IMG/VR virus record: IMGVR_UViG_3300024503_000015
Coordinates: 1-64,000 of that record
Length of the DNA: 64,000 nucleotides
Strand: one strand, 5' to 3'
Shown one piece after another: positions 427-47,584 of this stretch (positions are counted from its first letter, which is position 1; each line of letters starts with the position of its first letter). The position numbers were made by a program, and so were the translations under genes. The notes beneath the pieces were generated by a model. It did not search any database and had not been told where the DNA came from. It saw only the letters and a list, made by a program, of their open reading frames with translations.

Positions 427-609
427 ATGGACGATAGAGATATTTTTATACAGACTAAACAGGGCCAGTTCGAATACGATGCAGACTACGACATATATCG
501 TAGACGGCCAGAACCTAGGGATTTGACACACTTTCAGCAGTTTGGTTGGATATATGTCTTAGCCATATTGACTGTGATCGCCTACTATGTTACACTAATT
601 CAAGGATAA
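427..609 (+). CDS. small membrane protein
   Basis: ATG at 427 (MDDRDIF) avoids overlap with upstream gene; C-terminal hydrophobic helix WIYVLAILTVIAYYVTLI. Confidence 0.6.
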   Translation: MDDRDIFIQTKQGQFEYDADYDIYRRRPEPRDLTHFQQFGWIYVLAILTVIAYYVTLIQG

Positions 610-616
610 GTACAGT

Positions 617-685
617 ATGAAAGCACCTTATGTTATAGTTGTAGCACTATTAGTTCTATATTCTTATATACATTGGCTTTGGTAA
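617..685 (+). CDS. 22-aa single-TM micropeptide (not in ORF track)
   Basis: MKAPYVIVVALLVLYSYIHWLW; ATAAGTA late-promoter-like box 4 nt upstream. Confidence 0.4.
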   Translation: MKAPYVIVVALLVLYSYIHWLW

Positions 686-716
686 AAACTGCCAGGGCTG
701 ACTGTTAAGTACCCTA

Positions 717-744
717 GCAAAATTTTTTACGCAGAATTTTTTGC
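717..744. repeat. tandem 14-bp near-palindromic repeat
   Basis: GCAAAATTTTTTAC / GCAGAATTTTTTGC back to back in intergenic DNA. Confidence 0.5.
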
Positions 745-774
745 ATTTCTGCAAATACCCATTAAGGAGCGCAA

Positions 775-1056
775 ATGGCCAAGAAGACCAGCAGTAAAAC
801 AGTTAAGCCAGAATCAGTACTGCCCACAGATGACTTTAGTAAATTGTCAGAAGATCAAACAGCAGAGATCCTAGAAGTAACCTTTGAAACTATCTGCAAT
901 CGTTTGGAACAAAGTGGTGTAGATCCTGATTTGATTACTGGCATACTGTTTAATCACTTTACTCAACGCTTGTGCGATGTTAATGATCGTGAACAGTATG
1001 AAATGATCCTAGAGATGGCCTTAGAAACCGCTTGGGACGAACAGACTATACATTGA
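775..1056 (+). CDS. hypothetical acidic protein
   Basis: TAAGGAG RBS upstream; 93-aa ORF followed by terminator. Confidence 0.8.
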   Translation: MAKKTSSKTVKPESVLPTDDFSKLSEDQTAEILEVTFETICNRLEQSGVDPDLITGILFNHFTQRLCDVNDREQYEMILEMALETAWDEQTIH

Positions 1057-1067
1057 TTCTGTGAATA

Positions 1068-1096: not shown

Positions 1097-1154
1097 GCGC
1101 TGGCGCTTCGCGGCTTCGCCGCTTAGAGACTCTCGCCCTGGTTAAATAAGTGTA

Positions 1155-3252: not shown

Positions 3253-3260
3253 AGTTTTTA

Positions 3261-4208
3261 TTATACTTTAATTTTAATGTGTTTGCAATCTTGCCATTGC
3301 CAATTCCAAATACGATTTCGTGTATGATAGGCCACTGCTCCTATACTGCTACTAGGATCGCCTGGATTAGGCAAACTCCAGATATAGTCAAACTTTGGTT
3401 CAACTACACTGGCATTGGCCTTACTGTTCATAGCACAGCCGCCCATATAGACTAGACAGTCTGCACCAGTTAGATCTTTGGCTGTACGCATAACCATATC
3501 AACCTGTTCTGTGAACACTTCCTGTACAGCGGCCGCTATGTCACACTGGTCCTGAAGATTTCTAATTTCGTGCGGCCAATCGTTGATGCCTCTGTGCATA
3601 TTTTTATGAGCATACACCAATGTGCCCATGTATTCTTTTACATCAAAATATACACGATCAGGATCACCTTGGTCACTCATCTGTTGTAGTAGATGTTCCT
3701 GTTTAATTGGTTCTAGTCCGCATAACTTTGTAAACGCACTATAGAATAACCCCAAACTGTGGGGATAAGTGCGACTCCAAACCTTCTTAAGTTCTCCGTG
3801 CTTACCTTCCCAGATAGTTGCACATTCAAATTCGCCTATAGCGTCGAGAACTACCACAGCACAGTGATTAAATGGGCTAGTGTAATAGCCTGAGGCGGCA
3901 TGACTGGCATGATGTGGAGTATAGGTCACTGGAGCATAGTGTACTCTTATTTTATTCAAGTAGCGTCCGGGTAGCACCGACATATCCAATGCTGTTTTAT
4001 ATTGTCCAGCGTAGACCTGTCTTGCTTTTTTAACCCAAGGACGTTCGTACCAAAAAATTCTATCAGGTGCACCGTGATGTAGTGCTTCTGTTATAACGGC
4101 TGTGTCAAACTCATCTTCTTTGCAACTAACCCAAGATTGAAGAGCGCCATTTTTAAACACAGCCAGGCTACTGCCGTGATTAAGAGCGTTAATACCCCAG
4201 TGAATCAT
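3261..4208 (-). CDS. carbamoyltransferase (NodU/CmcH family), N-terminal Kae1-like domain only
   Basis: HHASHAASGYYTSPF, DAIGE, SLGLFYSAFT, GGCAMN, PNPGD motifs; 315 aa with no C-terminal domain. Confidence 0.85.
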   Translation of the reverse strand: MIHWGINALNHGSSLAVFKNGALQSWVSCKEDEFDTAVITEALHHGAPDRIFWYERPWVKKARQVYAGQYKTALDMSVLPGRYLNKIRVHYAPVTYTPHHASHAASGYYTSPFNHCAVVVLDAIGEFECATIWEGKHGELKKVWSRTYPHSLGLFYSAFTKLCGLEPIKQEHLLQQMSDQGDPDRVYFDVKEYMGTLVYAHKNMHRGINDWPHEIRNLQDQCDIAAAVQEVFTEQVDMVMRTAKDLTGADCLVYMGGCAMNSKANASVVEPKFDYIWSLPNPGDPSSSIGAVAYHTRNRIWNWQWQDCKHIKIKV

Positions 4209-5289: not shown

Positions 5290-5299
5290 ATAGAGTATT

Positions 5300-6403
5300 T
5301 TAGTTTCTTACTATTACTTTGTCAACTTTTCCGGTAAAACCTGTTCCAGCAACACTGGTATATGTTCTATCCGATGTGGATAAACTTGCTTCACCCAGAA
5401 TAGATGCAGACAGGATACTACGAGTATAACTTGGTAATGAACCGTAAATTGGTCCTTGGATGGCTGTTACTGTTACTATAGCATCATTGGCTGGACTTGT
5501 TCCGCCCAGTGACGTGCCTAATAGTTTAATCTTATCGCCAATATCATATTGTCTGCCACCGTCTGGTATGCCAACAATAGTGTATGTACTACCTAACTTT
5601 TGAATATCAAATGTTGCGGTGCTACTGCTACTAGATTTATTATAACCAAAACGCATAAATCTGTAACCTGTGTTTTCGATAACTTTGGTTACGCTACTTG
5701 CACTGGTAACTTCTACTGTATCAATTAATTTCCAAGTCACGCTAGATGCTGTGCTTTTATCTGAGGTTGCATAAACATTAACAAAACCGTTGAACGGATC
5801 TGTTGTATCTGGTACTACTTCAATTTCTACGCTACCAATTACTGTACTATCTGTGGCGGTACTGTAATCATCATTTAAGTAAGTGCCGAAAGGTACAATT
5901 TCACTTAAGAACTGATTACGGTCAAATTCAAAGTTAAAGACCTTTGCCACATCAATAATGTCACCAAAGCCGAGTTTTTCATTATAACCATCCATTAACT
6001 GTACATTGCCAAATAATTCAAATTGCCCGTCTACATAGATAGGACTGTTAGTTGTACCGTCTGTTAGATAAGCCGCCATGCGTAGCATCTGTGGGTCAAT
6101 GTCTGCTATTGTGCTACTGCTAATAGTCAGCGTCATCTGTCCTAATTGACTAGGAACTGCTATGGCTGTGGCAGTAAACAAGTTCTTCTGATCTGCGTCA
6201 AAGAACTTAACAACTGCGGTTTGACCTACCACTGTCTGCTTGCGTTGCTCTGAATTCCTAACATCTAATTGTATGGTATTATCAATACCTTTATATAATT
6301 TTAATTGGCGTTGGTACACTTGTCTATACTCCGTGTTGAATCCTACTCTATCTGTAGTAACAGTGATTTTATTTGGTACTAAATAAAACTGAATTTTTTG
6401 CAT
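5300..6403 (-). CDS. putative virion structural protein
   Basis: Beta-rich, Thr/Ser-rich; GGRQYDIGDKIKLLGTSLGG module; ATAAATA late box upstream. Confidence 0.55.
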   Translation of the reverse strand: MQKIQFYLVPNKITVTTDRVGFNTEYRQVYQRQLKLYKGIDNTIQLDVRNSEQRKQTVVGQTAVVKFFDADQKNLFTATAIAVPSQLGQMTLTISSSTIADIDPQMLRMAAYLTDGTTNSPIYVDGQFELFGNVQLMDGYNEKLGFGDIIDVAKVFNFEFDRNQFLSEIVPFGTYLNDDYSTATDSTVIGSVEIEVVPDTTDPFNGFVNVYATSDKSTASSVTWKLIDTVEVTSASSVTKVIENTGYRFMRFGYNKSSSSSTATFDIQKLGSTYTIVGIPDGGRQYDIGDKIKLLGTSLGGTSPANDAIVTVTAIQGPIYGSLPSYTRSILSASILGEASLSTSDRTYTSVAGTGFTGKVDKVIVRN

Positions 6404-12697: not shown

Positions 12698-12728
12698 ATT
12701 TTATATTATAACACATTTTTTGACGTTG

Positions 12729-13574
12729 TCAACGATTTAGTACATTTAATATACGTTTTTGTGGAATGCCTTGGCTAATCTCATCAACGGTCCATTCGGT
12801 GTGTAGTATTTGATGAAACCAATTTTGTCTGTCAGGCAAGAAAATTTCATTAATTTTTGAAATACTAGAACTAAGTGGATGTGCCAGACTGGTTTTATCA
12901 CAAATTATAGGTATTCCTGCGATTGCCGCTTGGGTGCCAGGGCCACTGTTGTGACTAATCACACAATGATGGTCAAATGCAATGTCAAATTTGTCATAAG
13001 TGCCTGGAATTTTATTAGGTTGTTCAAAAATTATACCAGGTATAGGTGCAGTACCAATCGGATGACGAGGATGGGGTCGAAAAATTATGGGTCTGTCTGT
13101 ATATTTTTGAATTTCGGCAACTTTTTGAGATAACCAGGTTCTAGTAGTGGGCTGATTTTGCCATTGTAGGCTTCTTTCATGTTGGCCAACAATTAATATA
13201 GAATTTTTTCTCGAAGATTTTACATCCTGAAGACCTATACCTAATTTTCTCGCTCTGTCATAGTCGATATTTTCGGTATTTCCGTAAATTCCTTCATTGC
13301 TGATGTGATTAGCAGAAATTTTCCATGTACGACCTCGATCCAGTGCTCCAACTTCAATGATGAATACTGGTTTATTCATACTGCGGTAGTGCGTATAGAC
13401 ATTTTCGTTCATACGCATACGACCATTCCACAAAACACTCCAAATCACAGCACAATCTGCATCTTTGCTGTTTTCTCTCGGCTCAATACCAATTTGTCTA
13501 CAGCCGTCAAGGAATGATCCCCATATAGGTTCCGATTGTAATGCTGTCTGATTAGGAAAGTAGGCTATCTTCAT
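12729..13574 (-). CDS. GT-B glycosyltransferase-like (capsule synthesis KpsS-like)
   Basis: RPHP and HNSGPGTQAAIAGIPII motifs; start at MKIAYF next to promoter box. Confidence 0.65.
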   Translation of the reverse strand: MKIAYFPNQTALQSEPIWGSFLDGCRQIGIEPRENSKDADCAVIWSVLWNGRMRMNENVYTHYRSMNKPVFIIEVGALDRGRTWKISANHISNEGIYGNTENIDYDRARKLGIGLQDVKSSRKNSILIVGQHERSLQWQNQPTTRTWLSQKVAEIQKYTDRPIIFRPHPRHPIGTAPIPGIIFEQPNKIPGTYDKFDIAFDHHCVISHNSGPGTQAAIAGIPIICDKTSLAHPLSSSISKINEIFLPDRQNWFHQILHTEWTVDEISQGIPQKRILNVLNR

Positions 13575-13577
13575 AGA

Positions 13578-13589
13578 GTAAATATTTAC
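13578..13589. promoter_or_regulatory. palindromic bidirectional late promoter
   Basis: GTAAATATTTAC perfect palindrome in a 15-bp divergent intergenic gap. Confidence 0.7.
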
Positions 13590-18372: not shown

Positions 18373-18378
18373 TATTTA
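18373..18378 (-). promoter_or_regulatory. late promoter box at the head of the GT operon
   Basis: TTAAATACT on the - strand, 8 nt before ATG 18364. Confidence 0.55.
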
Positions 18379-21395: not shown

Positions 21396-21431
21396 AATGT
21401 TCTCCTTTTAATATGCCTGTTTTGCCTTATA

Positions 21432-21494
21432 TTTGTTTTACACCAACTGTAAAACAAAAAGTGCATACATTGTATTGTACGCACTTTTATTTAT
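21432..21494 (-). promoter_or_regulatory. gp32 leader: ATAAATA box plus two tandem hairpins
   Basis: ATAAATA at 21488-21494; 13-bp stem 21457-21488 with a G-U pair on the - strand; perfect 11-bp stem 21432-21458. Confidence 0.65.
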
Positions 21495-24120: not shown

Positions 24121-24127
24121 TATTTAT
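24121..24127 (-). promoter_or_regulatory. late promoter box
   Basis: ATAAATA 5 nt before ATG 24115. Confidence 0.65.
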
Positions 24128-25722: not shown

Positions 25723-25726
25723 ACTT

Positions 25727-25732
25727 TATTTA
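25727..25732 (-). promoter_or_regulatory. late promoter box
   Basis: TAAATA 4 nt before the terminase ATG. Confidence 0.6.
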
Positions 25733-25735
25733 ACG

Positions 25736-25763
25736 AAAAAAATGGGCTCCGAAGAGCCCATTT
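25736..25763 (-). terminator. intrinsic terminator with UUCG tetraloop
   Basis: AAATGGGCTC-TTCG-GAGCCCATTT-TTTT on the - strand. Confidence 0.85.
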
Positions 25764-25798
25764 GGCATTGTCTTAATCACAATGCAACCGCCGACGAA

Positions 25799-26539: not shown

Positions 26540-26541
26540 GA

Positions 26542-27108
26542 TTATTTTCCTTTTAGAGTTTTGGAGCCAATTGGACTTATACTAGCCCCAGACTCTGGCA
26601 TTTCAGATGCTTTTTCTTTATGTACTTGTGAATCCTGACGAGACTTTGCATCTGCAACTAAGCCTTTTAAGAAACTTGATACGTGCTTGTCACCAACTTT
26701 GTCCTGAGCACTTTCGCCACCAAGATCTTCTTTGGCGAGAAGTGCTTCGCCTTGTTCTTTATTAAAATTTACTTCTACTTGTTCTGCTTCTTGATTAGCA
26801 GTACGAACTCTTACACGGTTCTTTTCACAACCACATACTTGACAGATATAGTTTTCTAAAACCTGTGTAGTAGTAGGGTAGTTAACTTCAACACTGAATA
26901 CTGTAACATTTGTGTTTTCTAATTCTGGGAAATCTAAATGGCGCTCTGCAATAGGTAAGCGTTTGCCGTTATCCATTTTTACAATGGAAAAACGTTCCAT
27001 AGCACCTTTAAGTTTAGTCTTAGTTTCTTCGTCTAAATCGCCGGCGATTTTAATCTTAAACTCGTATGTTTTTTTGCTTTCTGTTAAGTATTCGTTAAAT
27101 GATTTCAT
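26542..27108 (-). CDS. putative head-associated protein
   Basis: Start MKSFNEYLTES resembles the T4 capsid-targeting sequence; ATAAATA at 27126-27132. Confidence 0.6.
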   Translation of the reverse strand: MKSFNEYLTESKKTYEFKIKIAGDLDEETKTKLKGAMERFSIVKMDNGKRLPIAERHLDFPELENTNVTVFSVEVNYPTTTQVLENYICQVCGCEKNRVRVRTANQEAEQVEVNFNKEQGEALLAKEDLGGESAQDKVGDKHVSSFLKGLVADAKSRQDSQVHKEKASEMPESGASISPIGSKTLKGK

Positions 27109-27128
27109 AGTTTTCCCCACTACTGTAT

Positions 27129-27635
27129 TTATTTCATATTCTTTAATTTTTCCAGCAGACTATTGCGGTCTGTAATCAAGTAGCCTTCGCCTTGAATGTC
27201 GTCCTCGTCTCCTGCTGGTTTAGCCTCTTGATCTAACTTCTGCTTTTTGAGCTGTAGTTCAATCATCTTGAGCTTTTTGTCTATCTTTGCTGATTTAGCA
27301 TCTATAGCATTTTTAAGTGCGGTCTGTGCTACTTCAAAAATTCTGGCACTATAGCGTGGTTCAACGTTCATGCCCAGGTCAACTAAATCGTCATAGGCAT
27401 CTGTGGCCTTTTGTGCTAGTGCATCTAATTCGCTGTCTGCAATATCGCCTAGTCCTTTAACCTGAGGTAATGCGGCAGCAATCTTGTCAATTTCTCCAAT
27501 ATCGCGGAATAGGTTTTCCGCTGGGGCATTATCACGAGCTAGTTGCTTTTCTGCTTTCCTGTGATTCTTTTCTTCGTTTTTAACGATTTCTTGATTTTCA
27601 GGTAAATTGAGTAATTCTTCAAGTTTTTTAGTCAT
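27129..27635 (-). CDS. terminase small subunit (gp16-like)
   Basis: Coiled coil with RYSARIFEVA and terminal DRNSLLEKLK; ATAAGTA 4 nt before MTKKLEE; near gp17. Confidence 0.6.
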   Translation of the reverse strand: MTKKLEELLNLPENQEIVKNEEKNHRKAEKQLARDNAPAENLFRDIGEIDKIAAALPQVKGLGDIADSELDALAQKATDAYDDLVDLGMNVEPRYSARIFEVAQTALKNAIDAKSAKIDKKLKMIELQLKKQKLDQEAKPAGDEDDIQGEGYLITDRNSLLEKLKNMK

Positions 27636-27642
27636 ACAATAC

Positions 27643-28080
27643 TTATCGCTTACCGTTATGGAAAATATCATTTTCCGATACAACTCTGAACATTATACCC
27701 TGCTGTTTACACCAAGCACGACAAGCCGCCCACTTGGCTTGATTTTTAATATATGCGGCCTGGTTAGTTTTACTACGTCCTACTTTTTCTAATACTGCTT
27801 GACTAGCAGGTTTAACTTCCCAGACTTCTGCGTGTTTACGTCCGTTTTTATCATTATAGACTACAAAAAAATCTGGTACATAGATAGTATGCTTGCCAGT
27901 TAAAGGATCTCTATAAGGAACTTTAACTACTTCACTGCCCCACTTTTCGATGGCTTGATTATTATCGAACATCTGCATTACTGCCCATTCCCAACTACTT
28001 CTGTAGGTAGGAGTTCTATTACCCATATACTTTTCTGGATTTTTTAAAGCGAACTTACCTTGTGCAAACTTGCTGGCCAT
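27643..28080 (-). CDS. gp4: head completion nuclease (T4 gp4/TnsA-like)
   Basis: YRSSWE, YVPDF, EVKP, KWAACRAWC. Confidence 0.85.
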   Translation of the reverse strand: MASKFAQGKFALKNPEKYMGNRTPTYRSSWEWAVMQMFDNNQAIEKWGSEVVKVPYRDPLTGKHTIYVPDFFVVYNDKNGRKHAEVWEVKPASQAVLEKVGRSKTNQAAYIKNQAKWAACRAWCKQQGIMFRVVSENDIFHNGKR

Positions 28081-28081
28081 A

Positions 28082-28465
28082 TTATACTACTATGTTTCTG
28101 CTTTCCAGTAAGTCGCCTTGACCTTGTTGACGATATCCTAGGGTAGATATCTTTTGTCTGTTATAGTTAAGGACTTCTGCAACTACGGCACTAAGTTTAA
28201 TATCTTCCAGACCTTTTAGTGTGTCTAACAATGTAAACACATTTACGCCGTCTATTTTAGCCTGTTGTAATAATACAATAGCAGTGGCTTGGCTGGCCAG
28301 ATCGTCAAAGCCTCTTTTTTGAAAGAAGCCAACTGTGGCATCGATTTGATCTGCTGGAAAACTAATAGGCTCAATGAAATAAGCATCAAAAAATGATTTT
28401 ACTTTTTCACCGGAATCTGTTTGCTCTGTTTGCGGTAAGTTACTGCTCTGTGATATGTTTGACAT
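28082..28465 (-). CDS. hypothetical structural-cluster protein
   Basis: 127-aa ORF coupled in a late operon. Confidence 0.7.
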   Translation of the reverse strand: MSNISQSSNLPQTEQTDSGEKVKSFFDAYFIEPISFPADQIDATVGFFQKRGFDDLASQATAIVLLQQAKIDGVNVFTLLDTLKGLEDIKLSAVVAEVLNYNRQKISTLGYRQQGQGDLLESRNIVV

Positions 28466-28467
28466 GA

Positions 28468-29967
28468 TTATCCTAAAAATCCTGGTAGTTTTGCTATAGC
28501 AGCCGACGCAATATTTGATACAGTTGGATCATTATTTTCTAATGCCTTTATTACGGCTGCTTCGGCTTGTGCTTTTGTTGCCGCTGGCAACGAGTCGTAT
28601 GCTTGCGCGGCCTGCTGAGGAGTAATTGCGATTCCGGCAGTTGCTCCGGCTGTGACTGCAACACCTGTAGCGAATCCTGCAACAAACCCATTGGCAAAGG
28701 CTTGTCGTGCTACTGCTGCCTTTGCCGCTGGATTGTTATTTAAAGTTTTGATCATTTGATCATTTGTCTTTCCAGAACTAGCAGCCACCGGTGCAAGTGC
28801 TTTAGTTGGTGCATTAGCCGCACTACTTGCCTTTTTAGGGAACAATACATTAGCCACACCGCTAACGTCAATTCCTGTGCTGGCACCAAGTGCAGATTTA
28901 AAAATACTAAATCCTTCTTCGCGTAGTCCTTCTTTAGTTAGTTTCTTAGCATTGTTATAAACGTTAATGCCTTTAATTAGTGTACCTAGTGTGAATCCAT
29001 TGCCGCCTGGTCCGAGATCACTAAGGATATCACCGATGCCACCAAGTACGCCGCCTTGACCAAACAAACTAGTTACACCGCCGCCTAATAATCCTAATGG
29101 GCTAGGCTGATTATCATAAAACTCTGTAGCAAATCCTTTTGGATTGCCACGACTAACTGCGCCGGCACCATATATAACTGCTTCATAGGCAACCTGCATG
29201 GTGTTACCAGATGCTTCTGTACTGCTGGTAGCAAGACTGTCATGACTCCAACTTGTAATTACTGGATTAATTAATGTATAACTCTGATACTGATGTCTTG
29301 CTAATTGGAATATTTGAATGCTACTAAAGAAAGGAGCACCGCTACCATTATCTAGGCCATAACGATATGTGTTTAGTGCGGAGCCTTTGTAACTATTACG
29401 CTGATAAGCGGCAGGCACACCTGCATCTGAGCTACCTAGGAATCCTTTAACTGCGCCTAGTAGTCCATTGCTTCCAGGTATAAAGCCTGCTATTAAATTT
29501 CCTACACCAGACAATAATGATCCTGCGGCAGATGATCCTGCACTACCGCCATGTTTACTGTCTGCAAAATAATAACCATAATACATAGCCCATAGGTTTG
29601 TTGTTAGGCCAAAGTTGTCATCATGAAATCCAACGCTAATTGGATCATATTCTAACTTAGTATGGATTTGTCTTTTTCTGTTATATTGTATTGGCTTTTC
29701 AACCTGAGCTCTAAACTTAGGAAGATCAATAGACTTAACCAACATATTGATAGCAGTACCGTGTTTCTGAATATCAAATTTTGCTGATCCTAAAGCACGT
29801 GGATTAATGTTGAATACCACGTGATACATCCACTTGCCTTTGGGAGCAAGTCGCATAGCCTGACTATTATAAAGTCTTGCCGCGTGTTGGAAATCGCCTA
29901 GCGTACCTTTAGGGTTACCTAGTCCTTGTCCTACGTTGTTTAAAAATCCGTTGAGTATGTTTGCCAT
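28468..29967 (-). CDS. tail-tube-fold baseplate/tube initiator protein (gp54/gp48-like)
   Basis: VKSIDLPKF..QYNRKR..YDPISVGFHDD tube-like motif; Gly/Ala-rich C-terminus. Confidence 0.6.
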   Translation of the reverse strand: MANILNGFLNNVGQGLGNPKGTLGDFQHAARLYNSQAMRLAPKGKWMYHVVFNINPRALGSAKFDIQKHGTAINMLVKSIDLPKFRAQVEKPIQYNRKRQIHTKLEYDPISVGFHDDNFGLTTNLWAMYYGYYFADSKHGGSAGSSAAGSLLSGVGNLIAGFIPGSNGLLGAVKGFLGSSDAGVPAAYQRNSYKGSALNTYRYGLDNGSGAPFFSSIQIFQLARHQYQSYTLINPVITSWSHDSLATSSTEASGNTMQVAYEAVIYGAGAVSRGNPKGFATEFYDNQPSPLGLLGGGVTSLFGQGGVLGGIGDILSDLGPGGNGFTLGTLIKGINVYNNAKKLTKEGLREEGFSIFKSALGASTGIDVSGVANVLFPKKASSAANAPTKALAPVAASSGKTNDQMIKTLNNNPAAKAAVARQAFANGFVAGFATGVAVTAGATAGIAITPQQAAQAYDSLPAATKAQAEAAVIKALENNDPTVSNIASAAIAKLPGFLG

Positions 29968-29972
29968 ATAAT

Positions 29973-29979
29973 TATTTAT
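29973..29979 (-). promoter_or_regulatory. late promoter box
   Basis: GATAAATA 5 nt before ATG 29967. Confidence 0.65.
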
Positions 29980-30006
29980 CGGCTAAGAAAAAGTGTGCAG
30001 ATAAAG

Positions 30007-30031
30007 AAAAAGGACACCGAAGTGTCCTTTT
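30007..30031 (-). terminator. intrinsic terminator with UUCG loop after the tail tube gene
   Basis: AAAAGGACAC-TTCG-GTGTCCTTTT. Confidence 0.85.
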
Positions 30032-30050
30032 ATATTGCTCCCGGAACTAA

Positions 30051-30671
30051 TTATCCACCTGTAGCGAGAGTTCCTAGAGCTCTTCCTACTGCTGTACCAA
30101 CGCCAGTGCCTTGTGGGCTCTGGATTGCGTTATCGTACTGAATAGTTAAATCAATAGTTACTGCGTCGTTACTACCGTAGTTTACAGTACCATAAGATGC
30201 TGTTGTTAAGAAGCATCCATAAATTTCCCAAGTTTCTAAAACTGTAGGAACGTTAGCACCGTTACCACCGTCCAACATTTCTAATCTAGTAGTAAACTTA
30301 TAGTCAATACCAGATGCTGCCGAACTTTGTTCAAAAAAGTCAAATTGTTTCTGTAGTTGCTCACCGACTAACTTTTGCACTTCACCTGTGGCATCGTCAC
30401 GCAATTTGCATGTGATTGGGTTCCACTTGTGTTTACCAGCCATGTAAACACGGCTGTTGTACACTGGTAATTCTACAGAATCAAATGTTACTTCTGGACG
30501 TTTTGCTTCAACAACTTGCTTGGTTAAGTTTGTTGTTGGTGTTGATACCCCAAAATTCTCAAATGAAATTCTGAATCTGTAAGACAGTTTAGGCATCAAC
30601 AAGCCTTGAGAGCTTGCTGACTGGTCACTGGCTAAGGGCACCGATAATCTGCTTAGTGTTGAAATAGACAT
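30051..30671 (-). CDS. gp19: tail tube protein (gp19-like)
   Basis: YMAGKHKWNPITCKLRDD, WEIYGCF, LTIQYDNA; directly after the sheath gene. Confidence 0.85.
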   Translation of the reverse strand: MSISTLSRLSVPLASDQSASSQGLLMPKLSYRFRISFENFGVSTPTTNLTKQVVEAKRPEVTFDSVELPVYNSRVYMAGKHKWNPITCKLRDDATGEVQKLVGEQLQKQFDFFEQSSAASGIDYKFTTRLEMLDGGNGANVPTVLETWEIYGCFLTTASYGTVNYGSNDAVTIDLTIQYDNAIQSPQGTGVGTAVGRALGTLATGG

Positions 30672-30691
30672 TCTCTATAATCTCCTGTAAT

Positions 30692-30698
30692 TATTTAT
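30692..30698 (-). promoter_or_regulatory. late promoter box
   Basis: GATAAATA followed by AGGAGA RBS upstream of the tube gene. Confidence 0.65.
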
Positions 30699-30705
30699 CT
30701 TAGCC

Positions 30706-33700
30706 TTATAGCCCTGCAATCTCGCCAGTATTCTTCAAGCGTACTGGAATGTAAATGAATTCCACAGCCTTAACTGGTTCAATAGCAATGTCTACATACA
30801 ATTCGTTTCTATCGATTCTGTTAGGTGTATTGTTACTTTCGTCACAAACAACTAAGAAGTCGTATAGAGCACGTTGTCCGACTAACTCTAACAACAGACT
30901 TTCAACCTGTTGCTTGATTTCGTCCCTAGTGATCTTGTCATTAGGTTCGAAGATGTATGGTTTAGCAAGTTTGTTCAACTGGCTACGTAGGTAAATTACC
31001 AAACGTGCTACGTTGATTCTATCTAGGGCAGAAGCGTTTCTTGCACGAGTCTTCTGTCCAAAGTTTACTAAACCTGCTCCAGTGAAGAATGTGATTGGGT
31101 TAACTTTTACGTTATACAATGTATCACGTTGTCCTTCATTTAGAGCAACTGATTGGAACTCGCCTTCTGCTGTTACATAACCAACTGCTGTTGCGTTAGT
31201 AATGCCGCCACGACGTGTTCCTGCTGGTGCAAACCATGGATAACTTACTTGGTCACTTAGTGCAATCATACGGCAAATCATGTGACTTGGAGGAACAGCA
31301 ATATCGCGTCCTGCATTGTCACTTGTAAAGCCCCATGGATAGAACACACCTAAGTATTCATCGTAACTTACAAGTCCGTTATCATCGTCTTGTAGACTTA
31401 GAGCAACGTTGTTACCCCAGTCGTTAATTGTTGTAGCATCTGGAGTTAAGCGTGGAGGAGTATCGCCTACAACAAAAGTTGTTAAACCTCTGTCATAGTT
31501 CAATGAAACCATTTCGCCAATTAGCTCTGGATATCCTGGGCAAGCCATTAAGTTGAATGAACGAACTTCTGTATCGCGGATATCTTCGTTGCTGTTTACC
31601 AATGCTTGTAATGCTTGGATAATAACCTTACGCTGTGCATGACGTCCAAATGAACCGCTACCATCTGCTTGGTTACCAGATTCAGTAACCCAACGATGTG
31701 GATAGTAGGCTTCCATTGATACATCGCCCATACGTCCGTTGTCTGCTTGTAGGTCAACATAATTGCGCTTGAAACGCTTAACGTTGAAGCCACTGCGACG
31801 TAGGTTGAATAGAATCATACCACGTGGATATAGTGCAGGATCTGGAGCATCGAAGTCTAGGAAATCGCTATTCCATAAGTCTGCGATTGTGCTAGGGTTC
31901 ATTTCGCCACCGCTAGTTGCCCAACGTGCATCGGCAAATAATACGCCGTTTTCTGTTGTTTGATCTGATGTGTCTAATGTTACCCACTTCAATGTATCAC
32001 CGTTCCAACGTTTGATTACTGGATAGTTTTCAATGTCGCTGGTGTCGATCCAAAGTTGTCCATCTGCTTCTGCATTGATTTCTGTAGTGCCATCTGCGAA
32101 CATTGTTGGTTCAGAAGCACTTACAATAGGACCTGCTGGGTCTGTGTTTGGATAACCGCCAACGGCCTTTCCATAACCTACCCAAGTACTACCATCGTGT
32201 ACCATAATATCCACTTCATCAACAACTGAACTATACCATAGTTCGCCGTCTGCAACTAGTGTAGTTGGAGCGGCTGTGTCAATGAAATAACTTTGTGTTG
32301 TGCCAGCAAATGTACGTGGAATCCAGTTAGAAGCAACATACTCGTATGTTGCATCAGATTCGCCTAGAATATAAACGTTAGTGTTCTCGCTGATAAATCC
32401 TAGTCTACCAACTGCTGAAGCACCTGTTGCGCTGTCGCCAACGTCAGCAAAACGAATATCGCCACCAACTGTGTTTTCAATCTTAACACGGTTGTCTGAG
32501 GTTACGCTGGCTTCAATAGCACCAATGTTAGCACTATTAATTGCGGCTGCGATGTTTGCGGCTGTTGTTGCGGCCACACCTGATGCAGTAAATGTTACAA
32601 CACCTTGCGCTAGTGTAGCACTACCTGCTTGTCCAGCACCAAGGCTAATAGCATAATCTTGTCCAGAAGTTAATGTTGTTAAACCAATTTGAACTGTATT
32701 AACTACTGTTGAACCGCTACGTGCTCTACGCATTACACGGAATTCTGCTAAAGGCTGTGCAAATTCATCGTAATTGTATTGTACATACACAGAATTAACA
32801 GGAATACCAATACCGCCCTTAGTTGGGTCAATACCGTAGTTTGCCGCTTGGTTAGTAGCATACAACGGAGCACTGGCTTCGTCCCATAACTGTGTAGTAC
32901 CGTTGTAAATCTTAACTCTCCAACGAGCACCTAAGTTAGGTTCAGTTGTCTTCATCCATACAGAACCTGTAGGACGAGCAATGTTTCCGCTCTTATTACG
33001 CTTCCATAATGGAACGTCTGTATGCGGACTAATCTTGAAATCTGGAGCATAATATGTTCCAGCAACAATACCTAGTTGAGAAATGTTTGTACTTGCGCTG
33101 GTAACTTCGATACTGTTAACATCGTTTGTAGTTGCAAATAAATGCACTTGACCATTCACAACACGAGCACCTACTCCTGGAACTTGTCCATCTAATGCTG
33201 TTGCTACTTCTGTGGCTGTTCCGCCCGAGAATGGCACAGATGATCCAGGTGTTACGCCGTTTACTACAATAGTCATAGCGCCTGAAGTATATGGTGCGGC
33301 ACTAACAGTAGCAGTTGGAGTTACCACAGGATGAGCTGTTGCCCATGCGCTAGAACCAATCTGTACCCATGTTGCTGTACCAACTGAACCATCATCTTCA
33401 AATTGGCTCTTGTAATAAACTTTTACCAAGTGGCCAGTTGATGTGTTGTCAGCATTGTATGAAATTGCGTATGTACCAACTGCACCAACGCTGTTTGCTG
33501 GAGTACCAGTTGTAACGATTGTTGGAACTTTGTTAGTAAAACTCTGTCCGCCTGTTGAAGTAGCGGCAGCACCGTTCCATTCAAAAATACCATATGTAGT
33601 TGCATCGCTGTCTAACCAGAATGTACCATCTGCTGGTGCACCGCCTGGAGCGTCTGCGCTTGCCACTAGTTTTTCCAAGTCTAAGTCAGCGCGAACAACG

Positions 33701-34064: not shown

Positions 34065-34070
34065 TATTTA
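34065..34070 (-). promoter_or_regulatory. late promoter box for the sheath gene
   Basis: CTAAATA upstream of the AGGAGA RBS of gp18. Confidence 0.55.
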
Positions 34071-34129
34071 GCGGAGATTCGGTAAAATGCTCTGTTATAC
34101 AACCATGAAAAGGGTCCGAAAAGGGGTGG

Positions 34130-34137
34130 TATAAATA
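34130..34137 (+). promoter_or_regulatory. T4 late promoter consensus
   Basis: Perfect TATAAATA 4 nt before ATG 34142. Confidence 0.75.
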
Positions 34138-36286: not shown

Positions 36287-36302
36287 TATTTAGCGTTAAA
36301 TA
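36287..36302. promoter_or_regulatory. divergent late promoter pair
   Basis: TATTTA-GCGT-TAAATA between gp13 (-) and the QueC-like operon (+). Confidence 0.6.
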
Positions 36303-44042: not shown

Positions 44043-44070
44043 AATTTCGTCCCAATAAGCTCGCTTCCAG

Positions 44071-44091
44071 TATTTATCGCTACGATAAATA
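44071..44091. promoter_or_regulatory. inverted-repeat divergent late promoter pair
   Basis: TATTTATCG-CTA-CGATAAATA perfect 9-bp inverted repeat. Confidence 0.7.
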
Positions 44092-44098
44092 TATTACT

Positions 44099-45706
44099 AT
44101 GCCAAGATTAAGCCTTTACAAACCCGAAAAATCGCAGGATTACAAGTTTTTTGACCGCACAGTCTACGAGATGTTTCAAGTAGGCGGTGTAGACGTCTAC
44201 GTACACAAATACATAGGCACAGACGACGGTTCTGTGGTCAAAGATCATACACAAATTCAGGATCTACTGTTCCTAGAAAACAGAGATAGAAAATACAGCG
44301 ACGATATCTACACACTTCGCGGGCACTATCAGGTACAGGACATTGATTTTAACCTCAGTCAATTTGGGCTTTTCTTAAGCAACGATACAATTTTTATGAC
44401 TGTTCACATCAATAATAGTGTGGACTTACTAGGTCGTAAAATCATGGCGGGAGATGTTATAGAACTACCCAACTTAAAAGACGAGCATGCCATGAACGAC
44501 TATGCCACTGCTTTGAAACGCTTTTATGTAGTAGAAGAAGTTAATCGTGCCGCAGAAGGTTTTTCAGCCACTTGGTATCCGCACTTGTATCGTGTAAAAT
44601 TAAAGAGCATAGTAGACAGTCAAGAATACAAAGATCTGCTGGATCGTCCAACAGAGTCTGACAATTATGCTGGGGAGTGGAGCCCTAATATGAACTACTA
44701 TCCTGGGCAGGTGGTAAAATACAAAGGCACGCTCTACGAAGTAACGCAGGAAGTTGTGGGCAATATTCCTGGATTAACTGAAACTACGATCGAACCCACA
44801 GTTACAGATGCCTGGGCAGACTATTATACAGTCAGCACCACCGATACTCTTAGAGATCTAATGAGTACCTATGAAAAAGAAAAGGCAATTAATGATGCAG
44901 TTGTAGCAGAAGCAGAAGCAGATGCTAAGAAAAGTGGCTACGAAACTAGTCATTTTTATACAGTTAAAGTTGATCAAAGTACTGGCACAGTTGATTTAAC
45001 GTTGGTAACATCTGATACTGATATTTCCGTAGATACAAATGTAAGTTCTAGTCCTTTACCTTTAAAAGATGGTTACACTGGATACCTATTAGGCGACGGT
45101 ATTGCTCCTAACGGTCCAATAGTCGACACTACTGATATCACTATTCCAGAAGGACAGGTAGATGCACAGTTTGGATTTGGTATACAGTTCCCGAGTACTG
45201 CCAGCACTGGCGATGTATTTTTAAGAACAGACTTTTTACCTAATCGCATGTTTAGATACGATGGTCGAAGATGGGTCAAACAAGAAGATAATGTACGTAT
45301 GACTATGAGCAACAGTGACGATACACGTCAGACACAGCGTACTGGATTTGTTAATAATACTCAGAAGTCAGGAATTAATCAATTGGCCACCGATGTTGTT
45401 TATATCGACTTGCTTGGAGATCCAATTTGGGAAAGCGGCAGTATCACACAAGATTTACAAATTACAACAACGTCTGTGTTTATTCAGACCAACGTTGCAT
45501 ACAATAAAAACTATCTAGTCGAAGTATGGTTAGATGAACAGAGTAAAGCAACAAAGATTACTACATCCGAAGTCAGCGGTGCATTAGCATTCACTATCGG
45601 ACACCCTGTACAGGATAATTCTGTAATTAGATATACAATCTATGACAAGGTAGTAACACAAAGACAGAGCCTTAGTAAGGCTCTTAGACCACAGGCGGAC
45701 AACTAA
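44099..45706 (+). CDS. neck protein (T4 gp14-like) with insertions
   Basis: DLLFLENRDRKY, LSQFGLFL, GDVIELP; CBM-like insert WSPNMNYYPGQVVKYKGTLYEV. Confidence 0.7.
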   Translation: MPRLSLYKPEKSQDYKFFDRTVYEMFQVGGVDVYVHKYIGTDDGSVVKDHTQIQDLLFLENRDRKYSDDIYTLRGHYQVQDIDFNLSQFGLFLSNDTIFMTVHINNSVDLLGRKIMAGDVIELPNLKDEHAMNDYATALKRFYVVEEVNRAAEGFSATWYPHLYRVKLKSIVDSQEYKDLLDRPTESDNYAGEWSPNMNYYPGQVVKYKGTLYEVTQEVVGNIPGLTETTIEPTVTDAWADYYTVSTTDTLRDLMSTYEKEKAINDAVVAEAEADAKKSGYETSHFYTVKVDQSTGTVDLTLVTSDTDISVDTNVSSSPLPLKDGYTGYLLGDGIAPNGPIVDTTDITIPEGQVDAQFGFGIQFPSTASTGDVFLRTDFLPNRMFRYDGRRWVKQEDNVRMTMSNSDDTRQTQRTGFVNNTQKSGINQLATDVVYIDLLGDPIWESGSITQDLQITTTSVFIQTNVAYNKNYLVEVWLDEQSKATKITTSEVSGALAFTIGHPVQDNSVIRYTIYDKVVTQRQSLSKALRPQADN

Positions 45707-47136
45707 TGCAATGGTTTTATGACGGCCAAATAAGGCGATATATTGGACAGGTAATCCGTATGTTAAGCGGATTTAAGTATCAAACAGGTGACGGAAAACA
45801 AATTACCGTGCCTGTAATCTACGGCGATATGACTCGTCAAGTAGGTCAAGTAATCAAAGACAATTCAGAAAATAAACTGCCCAGCGCACCTCGTATAGCA
45901 GTCTACATTACTGGCTTGGCTATGGATAAAACTCGCTTAGGTGATAGTACTTTTGTTAGCAAAGTGCATATTCGTGAACGAGAATATGACGATGTCACGG
46001 GCGAATATACTGCTAAACAAGGTAATAATTTTACTGTTGAGCGACTAATGCCAACACCATATAAGCTCACTCTTAAAGCAGATATATGGACTACAAACAC
46101 AGATATGAAACTGCAAATTATGGAGCAGATTCTAATGTTGTTTAATCCAAGTTTAGAAATACAAACAACAGATAACTTCCTAGACTGGACTAGTTTAAGT
46201 GTTGTAGAACTAACAGATATCACCTTTAGTTCTAGAAGTATTCCTGTAGGTGCTGAAACAGAAATTGATGTAGGCAGTTTAACGTTTGAAACTCCTATAT
46301 GGATCAGTGCTCCTACTAAAGTTAAGAAATTAGGTGTAGTAACAGATGTATTAATGAATATCTTTGATGCTACAGGTAATTTAACACCAGATTTTGTCAG
46401 CGGCAAGCCAGCGGCAGTAGAATTTAATAACGTTGCGGGCTACGGTATATTAGTTTATAACAATAAATTAAGTTTATTAAAGGGCAGAGAACCTTTATTA
46501 ATCGACGATGCTGCCGATTCGGTGTTTACTAAAATAGGTGCAGATATAAGTTGGAATTTTATATTTGAACAGTACCCTGGTAAATTTAGAACAGGTGTTA
46601 GTCAAGTGTTTTTAATTCAAGACGACGGTAATCAGATAGTGGGCACTCTCAGCGAAGACGCAGACGATAGTACAATATTACACGTTAATTGGGACCAAGA
46701 TACATTCCCAACTAACACACTGATAGCCAATGCTAATAATTCTGTTCTTAGAGGATCTGTAGATGCTATTGTTGACCCAACAAGATTCAATCCACGTCCA
46801 AGATTACCAGGTGGCGCATTAGATTGGCCCGACATGACCAATGGTCCTATTAGATACATTATTTTAGAAAGCATAGGCGACACTATTAATGATGATGGAC
46901 CAGACGGGTGGAAAAATCAAGACGGCACAGACTTCTATGCCGAAGCAAACAGTATTATAGAATGGGCAGGTACACACTGGGAAGTAGTATTAGACCCTGC
47001 GGATCCTGACCTAGTAGGCACACCTGTATATATTACCAATCTTAGAACCGGTATACAATACAAATTCTTAGACGGAGAATGGACAAAATCATTCGAAGGC
47101 GAATATCGAAAAGGGCACTGGCGTTTGATATTCTAA
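45706..47136 (+). CDS. gp15: tail sheath stabiliser/terminator (T4 gp15-like), extended
   Basis: FYDGQIRRY, VPVIYGD, PTPYKL, QIMEQILMLFNPS. Confidence 0.8.
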   Translation: MQWFYDGQIRRYIGQVIRMLSGFKYQTGDGKQITVPVIYGDMTRQVGQVIKDNSENKLPSAPRIAVYITGLAMDKTRLGDSTFVSKVHIREREYDDVTGEYTAKQGNNFTVERLMPTPYKLTLKADIWTTNTDMKLQIMEQILMLFNPSLEIQTTDNFLDWTSLSVVELTDITFSSRSIPVGAETEIDVGSLTFETPIWISAPTKVKKLGVVTDVLMNIFDATGNLTPDFVSGKPAAVEFNNVAGYGILVYNNKLSLLKGREPLLIDDAADSVFTKIGADISWNFIFEQYPGKFRTGVSQVFLIQDDGNQIVGTLSEDADDSTILHVNWDQDTFPTNTLIANANNSVLRGSVDAIVDPTRFNPRPRLPGGALDWPDMTNGPIRYIILESIGDTINDDGPDGWKNQDGTDFYAEANSIIEWAGTHWEVVLDPADPDLVGTPVYITNLRTGIQYKFLDGEWTKSFEGEYRKGHWRLIF

Positions 47137-47149
47137 ACTAAGTAAGTGC

Positions 47150-47584
47150 ATGAAAGAACAGATAGTCTGCTCTGGCGCACTTTTCTATGCCAAAAACACT
47201 AAACGATTCCTACTGCTACAAAAAGCAGAAGGCAAACACGCGGGCACATGGGGGTTAGTTGGCGGCACTAACGTCGAAGGCGAAACTGCATGGCAAGGGC
47301 TTCAACGAGAAATCGAAGAAGAAATTGGTTCTGTTCCAAAAATAATCAAAACAATTCCTATAGAAACGTTTGTTAGTAATGACAGCGTTTTTAATTTCCA
47401 CACCTACCTTTGTGTTATAGAACAAGAATTTATTCCTGTACTAAGCAAAGAGCACAATGGATGGGCATGGTCAACTGTAGATAGTTCTCCTAAACCTTTA
47501 CATCAAGGTTTGCGTAGCAGTTTTAGCAACAAAACTATCAGAACAAAATTACAAACTATTTTTGATATTGTAGAGTTAATTTAA
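47150..47584 (+). CDS. Nudix hydrolase
   Basis: Nudix box GGTNVEGETAWQGLQREIEEEIG. Confidence 0.9.
   Translation: MKEQIVCSGALFYAKNTKRFLLLQKAEGKHAGTWGLVGGTNVEGETAWQGLQREIEEEIGSVPKIIKTIPIETFVSNDSVFNFHTYLCVIEQEFIPVLSKEHNGWAWSTVDSSPKPLHQGLRSSFSNKTIRTKLQTIFDIVELI

What the first reader, a model, noticed from the sequence alone, without database searches (positions are those of the whole stretch)
606..47150. Widespread leaderless late transcription
Seen: a TAAATA/ATAAATA/ATAAGTA box ends only 4-8 nt before the ATG, with no room for a Shine-Dalgarno, for genes starting at 617, 1155, 13574, 13590, 18364, 24115, 25722, 27635, 29967, 34142, 36310, 44099 and 47150. High-demand genes (sheath, tube, gp32) instead have the box further upstream plus an AGGAGA RBS. 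Known: T4 gp55-dependent late promoters are a lone TATAAATA box with initiation a few nt downstream. Inference: many late mRNAs start at or near the AUG, giving two translation tiers that could set protein stoichiometry or evade host translation defences.
Basis: partly seen in the sequence, partly recalled or inferred. Interest (0 to 1): 0.6.

Follow-up and report, generated by a model that had tools for sequence, protein, structure and literature searches.

The report
Phage promoters placed directly against start codons
In this river jumbo phage and its many uncultured relatives, a T4-type late promoter box (TAAATA) sits a conserved 4-8 bases before the ATG of a subset of genes, so their mRNAs probably begin at the start codon and lack a ribosome-binding site, while the most abundant virion proteins keep a short leader with a strong one.

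Summary
All 13 sites carry the stated box 4-8 nt before an ATG; 617 opens only 22 codons and is not a credible gene.

- Spacing: across the 270-kb genome, TAAATA is about 3-fold depleted. Its distance to the next ORF-opening ATG is bimodal: 4-8 nt with no SD, or 17-30 nt with GGAG between.
- Conservation: orthologues in up to 56 distinct IMG/VR relatives keep the box at 4-8 nt (mode 5) for five genes, in 96-100% of cases. The spacer sequence varies, position -1 is a pyrimidine, and N-termini are conserved from Met1.
- Sigma factor: the genome encodes a gp55-like late sigma. With T4 geometry, a 5-nt spacer puts +1 on the A of ATG.
- T4 comparison: T4 has no box closer than 13 nt.
- Not late-specific: sigma70-like promoters show the same split, 6-7 nt or 17-28 nt.

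Leaderless initiation is therefore well supported by geometry and conservation, but no 5' ends could be mapped because only assembled RNA contigs were available. "Widespread" is overstated: about 14-17 of roughly 288 genes. The expression-tier idea fits the gene functions. The defence-evasion idea has no support.

The parts
25727..25732 (-). Late box TAAATA, 4 nt before the TerL ATG (25722). It lies immediately 3' of an intrinsic terminator.
   Evidence: Orthologues keep the box at 4-7 nt in 49 of 51 distinct upstreams, and the terminator stem shows compensatory changes.
25740..25763 (-). Terminator hairpin plus T-run, upstream of the TerL box.
   Evidence: The hairpin is kept with covarying stems in about 50 relatives.
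24121..24126 (-). Late box, 5 nt before the ATG at 24115 (661-aa virion protein). It directly follows the TerL stop codon.
   Evidence: 56 of 56 orthologue upstreams have the box at 4-7 nt.
29973..29978 (-). Late box (cGATAAATA), 5 nt before the ATG at 29967 (499-aa tube-like protein).
   Evidence: 28 of 28 orthologues have the box at 4-5 nt.
30008..30031 (-). Terminator after the tube gene, upstream of the 29967 box.
   Evidence: RNA-library contig depth falls from 20-51 over the tube gene to 1-5 downstream of it.
34132..34137 (+). Late box, 4 nt before the ATG at 34142 (111-aa HNH-like protein).
   Evidence: 46 of 47 orthologues have the box at 4-7 nt.
44086..44091 (+). Late box, 7 nt before the ATG at 44099 (535-aa virion protein). 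It stands back to back with the divergent box at 44071-44076.
   Evidence: 47 of 47 orthologues (42-100% aa identity) have the box at 4-8 nt.
13579..13588 (.). Palindrome TAAATATTTA, forming two overlapping divergent late boxes: the + box is 5 nt before ATG 13590, the - box is 8 nt before ATG 13574.
   Evidence: Both are kept in 3 relatives at 45-81% aa identity.
18373..18378 (-). Late box, 8 nt before the ATG at 18364 (228 aa).
   Evidence: Kept only in close relatives (91-93% identity) and absent from 13 more distant orthologues.
1143..1148 (+). Late box, 6 nt before the ATG at 1155 (215 aa).
   Evidence: No orthologues were recovered, so geometry is the only support.
36297..36302 (+). Late box, 7 nt before the ATG at 36310 (153 aa).
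   Evidence: No divergent orthologue was recovered.
27640..27645 (-). Variant box GATAAGTA, 4 nt before the ATG at 27635 (TerS-like, 168 aa). Its TAA is the stop codon of the upstream gene.
   Evidence: TAAGTA lies at 4-7 nt in 32 of 47 orthologue upstreams.
47139..47144 (+). Variant box TAAGTA, 5 nt before the ATG at 47150 (Nudix hydrolase).
   Evidence: TAA[G/T/C]TA lies exactly 5 nt before the ATG in 33 of 33 orthologues.
607..612 (+). TAAGTA, 4 nt before the ATG at 617. The claimed site is not supported as a gene start.
   Evidence: The ORF is only 22 codons.
30692..30697 (-). Late box with a leader: 20 nt before the tube ATG (30671), with AGGAGA between.
   Evidence: Orthologues have the box at 16-27 nt plus GGAG.
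34065..34070 (-). Late box with a leader: 41 nt before the sheath ATG (34023), with TAGGAGA between.
   Evidence: 24 of 24 orthologues have the box at 25-43 nt.
27126..27131 (-). Late box with a leader: 17 nt before the ATG at 27108 (virion protein), with GGGGA between.
21488..21493 (-). TAAATA box 92 nt before the gp32 ATG (21395), followed by a conserved hairpin and then AAGGAGAA.
12705..12732 (-). Sigma70-like promoter TTGACA-N16-TATAAT, ending 7 nt before the ATG at 12697 with no SD.
   Evidence: Kept in 4 relatives with varying spacer sequence.
5297..5325 (-). Sigma70-like promoter TTGACA-N17-TAAAAT, ending 7 nt before the ATG at 5289 with no SD.
3260..3288 (-). Sigma70-like promoter TTGCAA-N17-TATAAT, ending 7 nt before the ATG at 3252 with no SD.

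Best explanation
Core claim. The TAAATA boxes (extended consensus cGATAAATA) are -10-like late promoters read by host RNA polymerase carrying the phage's gp55-like sigma factor. In T4, the box spans -13 to -6 and transcription starts 6 nt after its last A.

Two designs. This phage clade uses the box in two ways.
- With a leader: the box sits 17-30 nt from the ATG. The RNA starts just before a GGAG Shine-Dalgarno and has a 12-25 nt leader. Tube, sheath, baseplate and fibre genes use this form. The major capsid gene also has a strong SD but lies inside an operon.
- Without a leader: the box sits 4-5 nt from the ATG (7-8 nt in some lineages). The predicted +1 is then the A of AUG, or a conserved purine 3 nt before it. 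The mRNA is leaderless and must be translated by direct ribosome binding to a 5'-terminal AUG. TerL, TerS, the HNH-like protein, the Nudix protein, the tube-like paralogue, minor virion proteins and a gp25-like baseplate protein use this form.

Sigma70 promoters. The same two designs occur with sigma70-like early promoters, at 6-7 nt or 17-28 nt after TATAAT. Leaderless expression is therefore a general mode in this phage, not a late-only trick.

Likely role. Leaderless translation is usually inefficient in proteobacteria. The most likely role is a compact, low-output expression tier for proteins needed in small amounts, each with its own promoter placed after a terminator.

Shown versus inferred.
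- Shown: motif, spacing, conservation and the sigma factor gene.
- Inferred: the start-site position, leaderless translation and the output difference.
For: - Spacing: it is bimodal with an empty gap at 9-16 nt, both in the genome and in 1.9 Mb of related contigs. There the counts are d4 = 68, d5 = 183, d6 = 5, d7 = 37, d8 = 7, then 1-6 per bin, then a broad second peak.
- Statistics: the controls and shuffles are given.
- Orthologue conservation: 226 of 229 distinct upstreams of five genes keep the box at 4-8 nt while the spacer sequence varies.
- Start-site signature: position -1 is T in 86% and C in 10% of box-adjacent orthologue upstreams, against 35-51% T elsewhere. This is the Y(-1)R(+1) start-site preference. 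For 7-nt spacers, an invariant A preceded by T lies at the 5th nt after the box.
- Start codon: it is always ATG, and N-termini are conserved from Met1, for example MRPLC in 41/44 and MPRLS in 45/51.
- Terminators: intrinsic terminators lie directly upstream of the TerL and tube-like boxes, so a new initiation is needed. RNA-library contig depth drops 5-20-fold after the tube terminator.
- Sigma factor: the gp55 homologue matches phrog_12791 at 6e-76 and phrog_234 at 3e-24, and T4 gp55 by BLASTP at 8e-10. It keeps N13, R57, F86, Y97 and T99 of the T4 base-flipping pockets (residues from PMC7892883).
- T4 geometry: the flipped adenines at -12, -9 and -8 place the last A of the box at -6.
- Internal consistency: the sigma70-like mode of 6-7 nt and the late-box mode of 5 nt each match their own -10-to-+1 distance.
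Against: - No 5' end was mapped. The only RNA data were assembled contigs, and some cross the predicted start sites, for example 25467-25760 in X21 and 29762 onwards in X20. This shows read-through RNA or DNA carry-over.
- gp33 and a T4-type sliding clamp were not found. Activation may therefore differ from T4.
- The start-site distance is borrowed from T4/E. coli and is untested for this sigma factor and host.
- 24115 lies 11 nt after the TerL stop codon, so termination-reinitiation could also translate it.
- The host is unknown, probably a betaproteobacterium, so its capacity for leaderless translation is unknown.
- Several box-adjacent sites (1155, 36310, 18364) lack deep conservation.
Confidence: 0.72

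Rival explanations
1. The box next to the ATG is a translation signal rather than a promoter. It would act as an A/U-rich, S1-type or otherwise non-SD ribosome-recruiting element on polycistronic late mRNAs that start further upstream.
For: - Many genes in this genome lack a clear SD (128 of 288 by a strict rule).
- Some RNA-library contigs run across the predicted start sites.
- 24115 and 27635 sit immediately after upstream stop codons.
Against: - The identical hexamer occurs 17-30 nt upstream of SD-led genes, where it cannot be the ribosome site.
- It is depleted about 3-fold genome-wide on both strands, as expected for a promoter.
- Terminators lie directly upstream of two boxes.
- A gp55 homologue is encoded.
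- Sigma70-type -10 hexamers show the same abutting geometry at their own characteristic distance.
- The spacing is sharp to one nucleotide.
Confidence: 0.1
2. The boxes are real late promoters, but the adjacent ATGs are not the functional starts, or the transcripts carry leaders of several nt because the start site lies elsewhere. The mRNAs are then short-leadered rather than truly leaderless.
For: - Spacers of 7-8 nt exist, and an invariant A lies 3 nt before the ATG in the 7-nt class.
- The start-site distance is inferred only from T4.
Against: - N-termini are conserved from Met1, and ATG is invariant in all orthologues.
- The dominant spacers are 4-5 nt. Even a 3-nt leader has no room for an SD, and such mRNAs are generally treated as leaderless. 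One study uses <10 nt as the threshold (PMC8244752).
Confidence: 0.12
3. The pattern is a chance product of AT-rich intergenic sequence, stop codons (TAA) and gene-start calling.
For: - The TAA of several boxes doubles as the upstream stop codon.
- My start-calling rule favoured box-adjacent ATGs in a few genes.
Against: - 15 same-composition hexamers and 18 one-mismatch variants show no such peak.
- Shuffles give 1.8 against 14 observed.
- A count using only longest-ORF starts still gives 12.
- Conservation in up to 56 divergent relatives.
Confidence: 0.02

Closest known systems
Bacteriophage T4 late transcription (gp55-dependent TATAAATA promoters)
   Same: - A lone -10-like A/T box with no -35 element.
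- A phage-encoded gp55-family sigma factor that retains most T4 pocket residues.
- Boxes ahead of virion genes.
- The leader-bearing form (box, short leader, GGAG, ATG) looks just like T4, where 24 box-to-ATG distances span 13-52 nt.
   Different: - The core is the 6-mer TAAATA with a cGA preference in place of T4's TA, and the 6-mer itself is depleted genome-wide.
- About a third to 40% of boxes abut the ATG at 4-8 nt. T4 has none closer than 13 nt.
- The sigma factor carries a roughly 125-aa insertion.
- gp33 and a T4-type clamp were not detected.
Leaderless genes marked by a -10 element next to the ORF (Deinococcus-Thermus, Actinobacteria, Thermus phages)
   Same: A promoter -10 element lies a few bp upstream of the ORF, with a strict spacing requirement and no SD. 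This is described for Deinococcus-Thermus (PMC12340547). It has also been used as a genomic proxy for leaderless genes (PMC3160421). From my own recollection, not checked here, the middle and late transcripts of Thermus phages phiYS40 and P23-45 are largely leaderless.
   Different: - Here the abutting element is a phage-specific gp55-type late box as well as a sigma70 box.
- The host is probably a betaproteobacterium, a group not known for abundant leaderless genes.
- Only a defined subset of genes uses the form.
Pseudomonas jumbo phage PA5oct and Rak2-like jumbo phages (closest cultured relatives)
   Same: TerL is 55% (PA5oct) and 44% (Rak2-like) identical. The sheath-tube-tube2...TerL module is syntenic. 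GATAAATA/TAAATA boxes with a leader and GGAG occur before some structural genes.
   Different: - In PA5oct, TAAATA is not depleted. The orthologues of TerL, 24115 and the TerS-region gene carry SDs or distant boxes, and the tube2 orthologue shows neither a box nor an obvious SD. Only one box-adjacent case was seen in 41 kb.
- The PA5oct omics paper reports sigma70-like motifs only, with no late box and no leaderless mRNAs (PMC7318152).

Membership tests
T4-type (gp55-dependent) late promoter system | A lone A/T-rich -10-like box (T4: TATAAATA) with no conserved -35 element | tested here: met
   The core TAAATA is invariant, with a weak cGA preference 5' of it. Positions -14 to -4 relative to the box show no conservation, and orthologue upstreams differ freely there.
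T4-type (gp55-dependent) late promoter system | A phage-encoded gp55-family sigma factor | tested here: met
   The gene lies at G000 112601-113431(-). It matches phrog_12791 at 6e-76 and phrog_234 at 3e-24, and T4 gp55 by BLASTP at 8e-10. N13, R57, F86, Y97 and T99 are conserved; H95 is F and L54 is Y.
T4-type (gp55-dependent) late promoter system | gp33 co-activator | tested here: not met
   phrog_254 gave one hit at E = 0.05. That ORF belongs to unrelated families. The record is estimated to be only 71% complete.
T4-type (gp55-dependent) late promoter system | gp45-type sliding clamp as activator | tested here: inconclusive
   phrog_223, PF09116 and PF02916 found nothing. The phrog control rang nowhere, the record is 71% complete, and a divergent clamp is not excluded.
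T4-type (gp55-dependent) late promoter system | Boxes precede late (virion and packaging) genes | tested here: met
   Sheath, tube, tube-like, TerL, TerS, adaptor, baseplate, fibre and virion proteins. Timing itself was not measured.
T4-type (gp55-dependent) late promoter system | Transcription starts about 6 nt after the last A of the box | not testable with these tools
   Only assembled RNA contigs were available. Indirect support: a conserved Y-R dinucleotide lies at the 5th-6th nt after the box.
Leaderless mRNA | A -10 element within about 10 nt of the start codon and no Shine-Dalgarno | tested here: met
   Spacers are 4-8 nt, and 0 of 14 such genes has an SD. G content between box and ATG in orthologues is low.
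Leaderless mRNA | AUG (not GUG or UUG) as the 5'-terminal start codon | tested here: met
   Every box-adjacent start in the genome and in all orthologues is ATG, with N-termini conserved from Met1.
Leaderless mRNA | Mapped primary 5' end at or within a few nt of the AUG | not testable with these tools
   The single read-laying run returned contigs only, with no read starts.

The most novel reading that the evidence does not exclude
A widespread clade of uncultured freshwater jumbo phages (hundreds of IMG/VR contigs, probably infecting Betaproteobacteria) has evolved, and holds under selection, a dual promoter architecture. In it, a gp55-type late sigma holoenzyme starts transcription exactly on the AUG of a fixed set of low-copy late genes. 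This would be the first T4-type late system that makes leaderless mRNAs. It would form a hard-wired low-output translation tier, and these mRNAs would not be affected by anything that targets SD-dependent initiation.
Probability: 0.55. Interest if true: 0.65.

Novelty: new variant of a known kind. Interest (0 to 1): 0.55.

Why it matters
- Transcription mechanism: if confirmed, gp55-type late transcription, studied for decades only with leader-bearing T4 promoters, can be positioned to the nucleotide to produce leaderless mRNAs. A large environmental phage clade would then use promoter-to-ATG distance as a two-state expression switch.
- Test system: it offers a natural system for studying start-site selection by a minimal sigma factor, and leaderless translation in a proteobacterial host.
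- Annotation: SD-based gene finders will miscall these starts. Longest-ORF calling here picked 13610, 36274, 27683 and 27120 instead of 13574, 36310, 27635 and 27108.
- Prediction: the TAAATA-N4-5-ATG rule allows late leaderless genes to be predicted directly from metagenomic sequence.

Tried and rejected
- Megablast of 12 kb against cultured phages found no match.
- RNA evidence: four riverine metatranscriptome runs were laid on 24750-30749. They are held only as assembled contigs, so no read starts are visible. Contig breaks near 25722 and 29967 are compatible with the model but not informative at depths of 1-6. The differences in contig depth between genes suggest RNA rather than DNA.
- PA5oct, Sinorhizobium phage Phosso and Yersinia phage fHe-Yen9-04 were examined as cultured models of the box-adjacent form. 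Their orthologues mostly use SDs, so published PA5oct RNA-seq cannot test this.
- The gp33 hit was spurious.
- T4-type clamp HMMs were negative.
- A phage-encoded ribosomal protein S21 or IF3, either of which could bias initiation, was not found.
- TAAGTA as a general variant box is not enriched genome-wide. It is accepted only at the two loci where it is conserved.
- The 617 site was rejected (22 codons).
- Literature searches found no description of leaderless gp55-type late mRNAs.
- Complex prediction, structure prediction and the large protein searches were not used, because they would not bear on the claim.

Full report
**What the window is.** The window is the first 64 kb of a single 270,181-bp IMG/VR virus record with 39.5% G+C, estimated 71% complete.
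- It carries T4-like modules: gp32-like SSB, UvsX, TerL, tail tube, a 1105-aa sheath and a gp15-like protein.
- Its closest cultured relative is Pseudomonas jumbo phage PA5oct, at 55% TerL identity. Sinorhizobium phage Phosso and Rak2-like phages follow.
- It has no nucleotide-level match among cultured phages.
- It comes from riverine metagenomes, and metatranscriptome runs also contain it.

**Check of the observation.**
- All 13 listed ATGs are preceded by the stated box with 4-8 intervening nt. Ten carry exact TAAATA and three carry TAAGTA.
- The ATG at 617 opens only 22 codons and is dropped.
- Across the genome, TAAATA is about 3-fold under-represented: 111 copies on both strands, against 283-372 expected and against 336-467 for its one-letter neighbours.
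- Nearly half of the copies (51) lie within 45 nt upstream of an ATG that opens at least 60 codons.
- The distance from box to ATG is bimodal: 17 copies at 4-8 nt, 2 at 9-16 nt and 21 at 17-26 nt. Nine control hexamers give flat profiles. The Fisher test gives p = 5e-11.
- Dinucleotide shuffles of the upstream regions give 1.8 +/- 1.3 against 14 observed at 4-8 nt, and 3.0 against 0 observed at 9-16 nt.
- In an unbiased hexamer count, TAAATA stands among the Shine-Dalgarno hexamers at -4..-8 and first at -17..-27.
- Same-composition permutations and single-mismatch variants show nothing comparable.
- No box-adjacent gene has an SD.

**Conservation.** Three IMG/VR scans recovered about 170 related contigs totalling 1.9 Mb. 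The table gives, for each gene, how many distinct orthologue upstream sequences keep the box.

| Gene (window ATG) | Box kept | Spacer |
|---|---|---|
| 24115, 661-aa virion protein | 56 of 56 | 4-7 nt |
| TerL (25722) | 49 of 51 | 4-7 nt |
| Tube-like protein (29967) | 28 of 28 | 4-5 nt |
| HNH-like protein (34142) | 46 of 47 | 4-7 nt |
| 44099, 535-aa virion protein (down to 42% aa identity) | 47 of 47 | 4-8 nt |

- The spacer sequence varies freely. Upstream of TerL, a terminator hairpin is maintained by compensatory changes.
- The variant box GATAAGTA before TerS (27635) is present in 32 of 47 upstreams. TAA[G/T/C]TA lies exactly 5 nt before the Nudix ATG (47150) in 33 of 33.
- Pooled over all contigs with identical contexts removed, the spacing counts are d4 = 68, d5 = 183, d6 = 5, d7 = 37 and d8 = 7. 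A trough of 1-6 per bin follows, then a broad second peak.
- By contrast, the leader-bearing genes (tube, sheath, 27108, 44042) have variable distances of 16-43 nt, always with GGAG between.
- All orthologue starts are ATG, and N-termini are conserved from Met1. The box-adjacent ATGs are therefore the real starts.

**What the box is.**
- The genome encodes a gp55-family late sigma factor at 112601-113431(-), next to a gp47-like gene.
- This protein aligns with T4 gp55 at E = 8e-10. It keeps N13, R57, F86, Y97 and T99, residues that form the pockets for the flipped adenines at -12, -9 and -8 in the T4 open complex (PMC7892883). It also carries an insertion of about 125 aa.
- Those adenine positions fix TATAAATA at -13 to -6. 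Here TAAATA would span -11 to -6, and +1 would be the 6th nt after the box.
- A 5-nt spacer, which is the mode, therefore puts +1 on the A of ATG.
- Position -1 is a pyrimidine in 96% of box-adjacent upstreams, against 35-51% T in other genes. This is the usual Y(-1)R(+1) start-site preference.
- In the 7-nt spacer class, an invariant A preceded by T lies at the 5th nt. This predicts a 3-nt leader.
- In leader-bearing promoters, the predicted RNA begins just at or before the GGAG.
- Intrinsic terminators lie directly upstream of the TerL and tube-like boxes.
- In four RNA libraries, contig depth is 20-51 over the tube gene and 1-5 beyond its terminator.

**Comparison with T4.** In the T4 genome, the 24 TATAAATA boxes that precede ORFs lie 13-52 nt from the ATG, all with SDs, and none is closer. 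The box-adjacent form is therefore not a general property of gp55 systems. PA5oct, Phosso and a Rak2-like phage have TAAATA boxes with leaders, but their orthologues of these genes do not abut the box. The PA5oct omics paper reports neither a late box nor leaderless mRNAs.

- Strong sigma70-like promoters (TTGACA-N16-18-TATAAT) show the same split. In the genome, 11 of 46 end 6-7 nt before an ORF-opening ATG with no SD. Examples in the window are 12697, 5289 and 3252.
- In the related contigs the counts are 17 at 6-7 nt, 1 at 8-16 nt and 45 at 17-28 nt.
- The arrangement is kept in relatives with varying spacer sequence.
- Six to seven nt is the sigma70 distance from the -10 hexamer to +1. Two different promoter types are thus each placed at their own correct distance, so that transcription would begin on the AUG. 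This is the strongest internal argument for a transcriptional reading over a translational one.
- It also shows that the phenomenon is not specific to late genes.

**Function.**
- Box-adjacent genes: TerL, TerS, an HNH-like protein, Nudix, a deoxyribonucleotidase-domain protein, a gp25-like baseplate protein, a tube-like paralogue, two virion proteins and several unknowns.
- Strong-SD genes: the major capsid protein (TAAGGAGAA, inside an operon), sheath, tube, large baseplate proteins and fibre proteins.
- This fits a low-output tier against a high-output tier, but expression was not measured.
- No S21 or IF3 gene was found that might bias initiation.
- The phage carries 32 tRNAs and a two-piece tmRNA of the betaproteobacterial type (RF01850, 129 bits). 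This points to a betaproteobacterial host.

**Limits.** No 5' ends were mapped. Some RNA-library contigs cross the predicted start sites. gp33 and a T4-type clamp were not found. The start-site distance is inferred from T4. Three window sites (1155, 36310, 18364) have little or no deep conservation. About 14-17 of roughly 288 genes are involved, so 'widespread' is too strong.

**Verdict.** This is a new variant of two known kinds, T4-type late promoters and leaderless genes, which are combined and conserved across a large uncultured clade.

Noticed in passing
Whole genome G000 (window included): The tetramer AGCT is about 6-fold avoided (138 copies against about 785 expected). Every surviving copy is GAGCT or AGCTC, so HAGCTD occurs 0 times where hundreds are expected. 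ACGCGT, ACGCGC, GCGCGC, GCGCGT and AGCGCT are also absent. This looks like restriction-site avoidance.
   Followed up: partly
G000 239,723-247,379, 252,503-252,576 and 258,267-258,730 (loci L175, L176): An array of 32 tRNA genes. It includes a tRNA with a CUA (amber-reading) anticodon. There is also a full-length two-piece tmRNA matching the betaproteobacterial model RF01850 (129 bits, E = 5e-40). This suggests a betaproteobacterial host.
   Followed up: partly
window 3260-3288, 5297-5325 and 12705-12732 (all - strand); 8 more sites elsewhere in G000: Sigma70-like TTGACA-N17-TATAAT promoters end 6-7 nt before ATGs with no SD. These are predicted leaderless early genes, and they are conserved in relatives.
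   Followed up: yes
window 21396-21493 (- strand): The gp32 leader runs as follows: a TAAATA box, a conserved 32-nt hairpin (21457-21488) with a T-run, an A/U-rich stretch, and then AAGGAGAA. The box is kept in 36 of 42 orthologues. The arrangement recalls the T4 gene 32 translational operator, although the hairpin could instead be the terminator of the upstream gene.
   Followed up: partly
window about 34107-34131 (+ strand): A conserved tandem AAAAGGG-N4-AAAAGGG lies immediately 5' of the late box of the HNH-like gene 34142 and is present in nearly all orthologues. It may be a regulator site.
   Followed up: no
window 13579-13588, 36287-36302 and 44071-44091: Divergent late boxes stand back to back or overlap. 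Examples are the palindrome TAAATATTTA, and TATTTATCG-cta-CGATAAATA. They drive genes on both strands from one short spacer.
   Followed up: partly
window 29989-30749: In four river metatranscriptome assemblies, the tube gene contig has a depth of 20-51 against 1-5 for neighbouring genes. One contig ends at 30046 in an Illumina adapter sequence, 5 nt past the tube stop codon and before the terminator hairpin.
   Followed up: no
G000 112601-113431 (- strand): The gp55-like sigma factor is 276 aa against 185 aa in T4. An insertion of about 125 aa sits between the conserved N-terminal KxNYxNNKxLL motif and the sigma-R2-like domain.
   Followed up: partly
window 13610/13574, 36274/36310, 27683/27635 and 27120/27108: Longest-ORF calling picks upstream TTG or GTG codons. 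Box position and orthologue N-termini instead point to the downstream ATGs as the real starts.
   Followed up: yes
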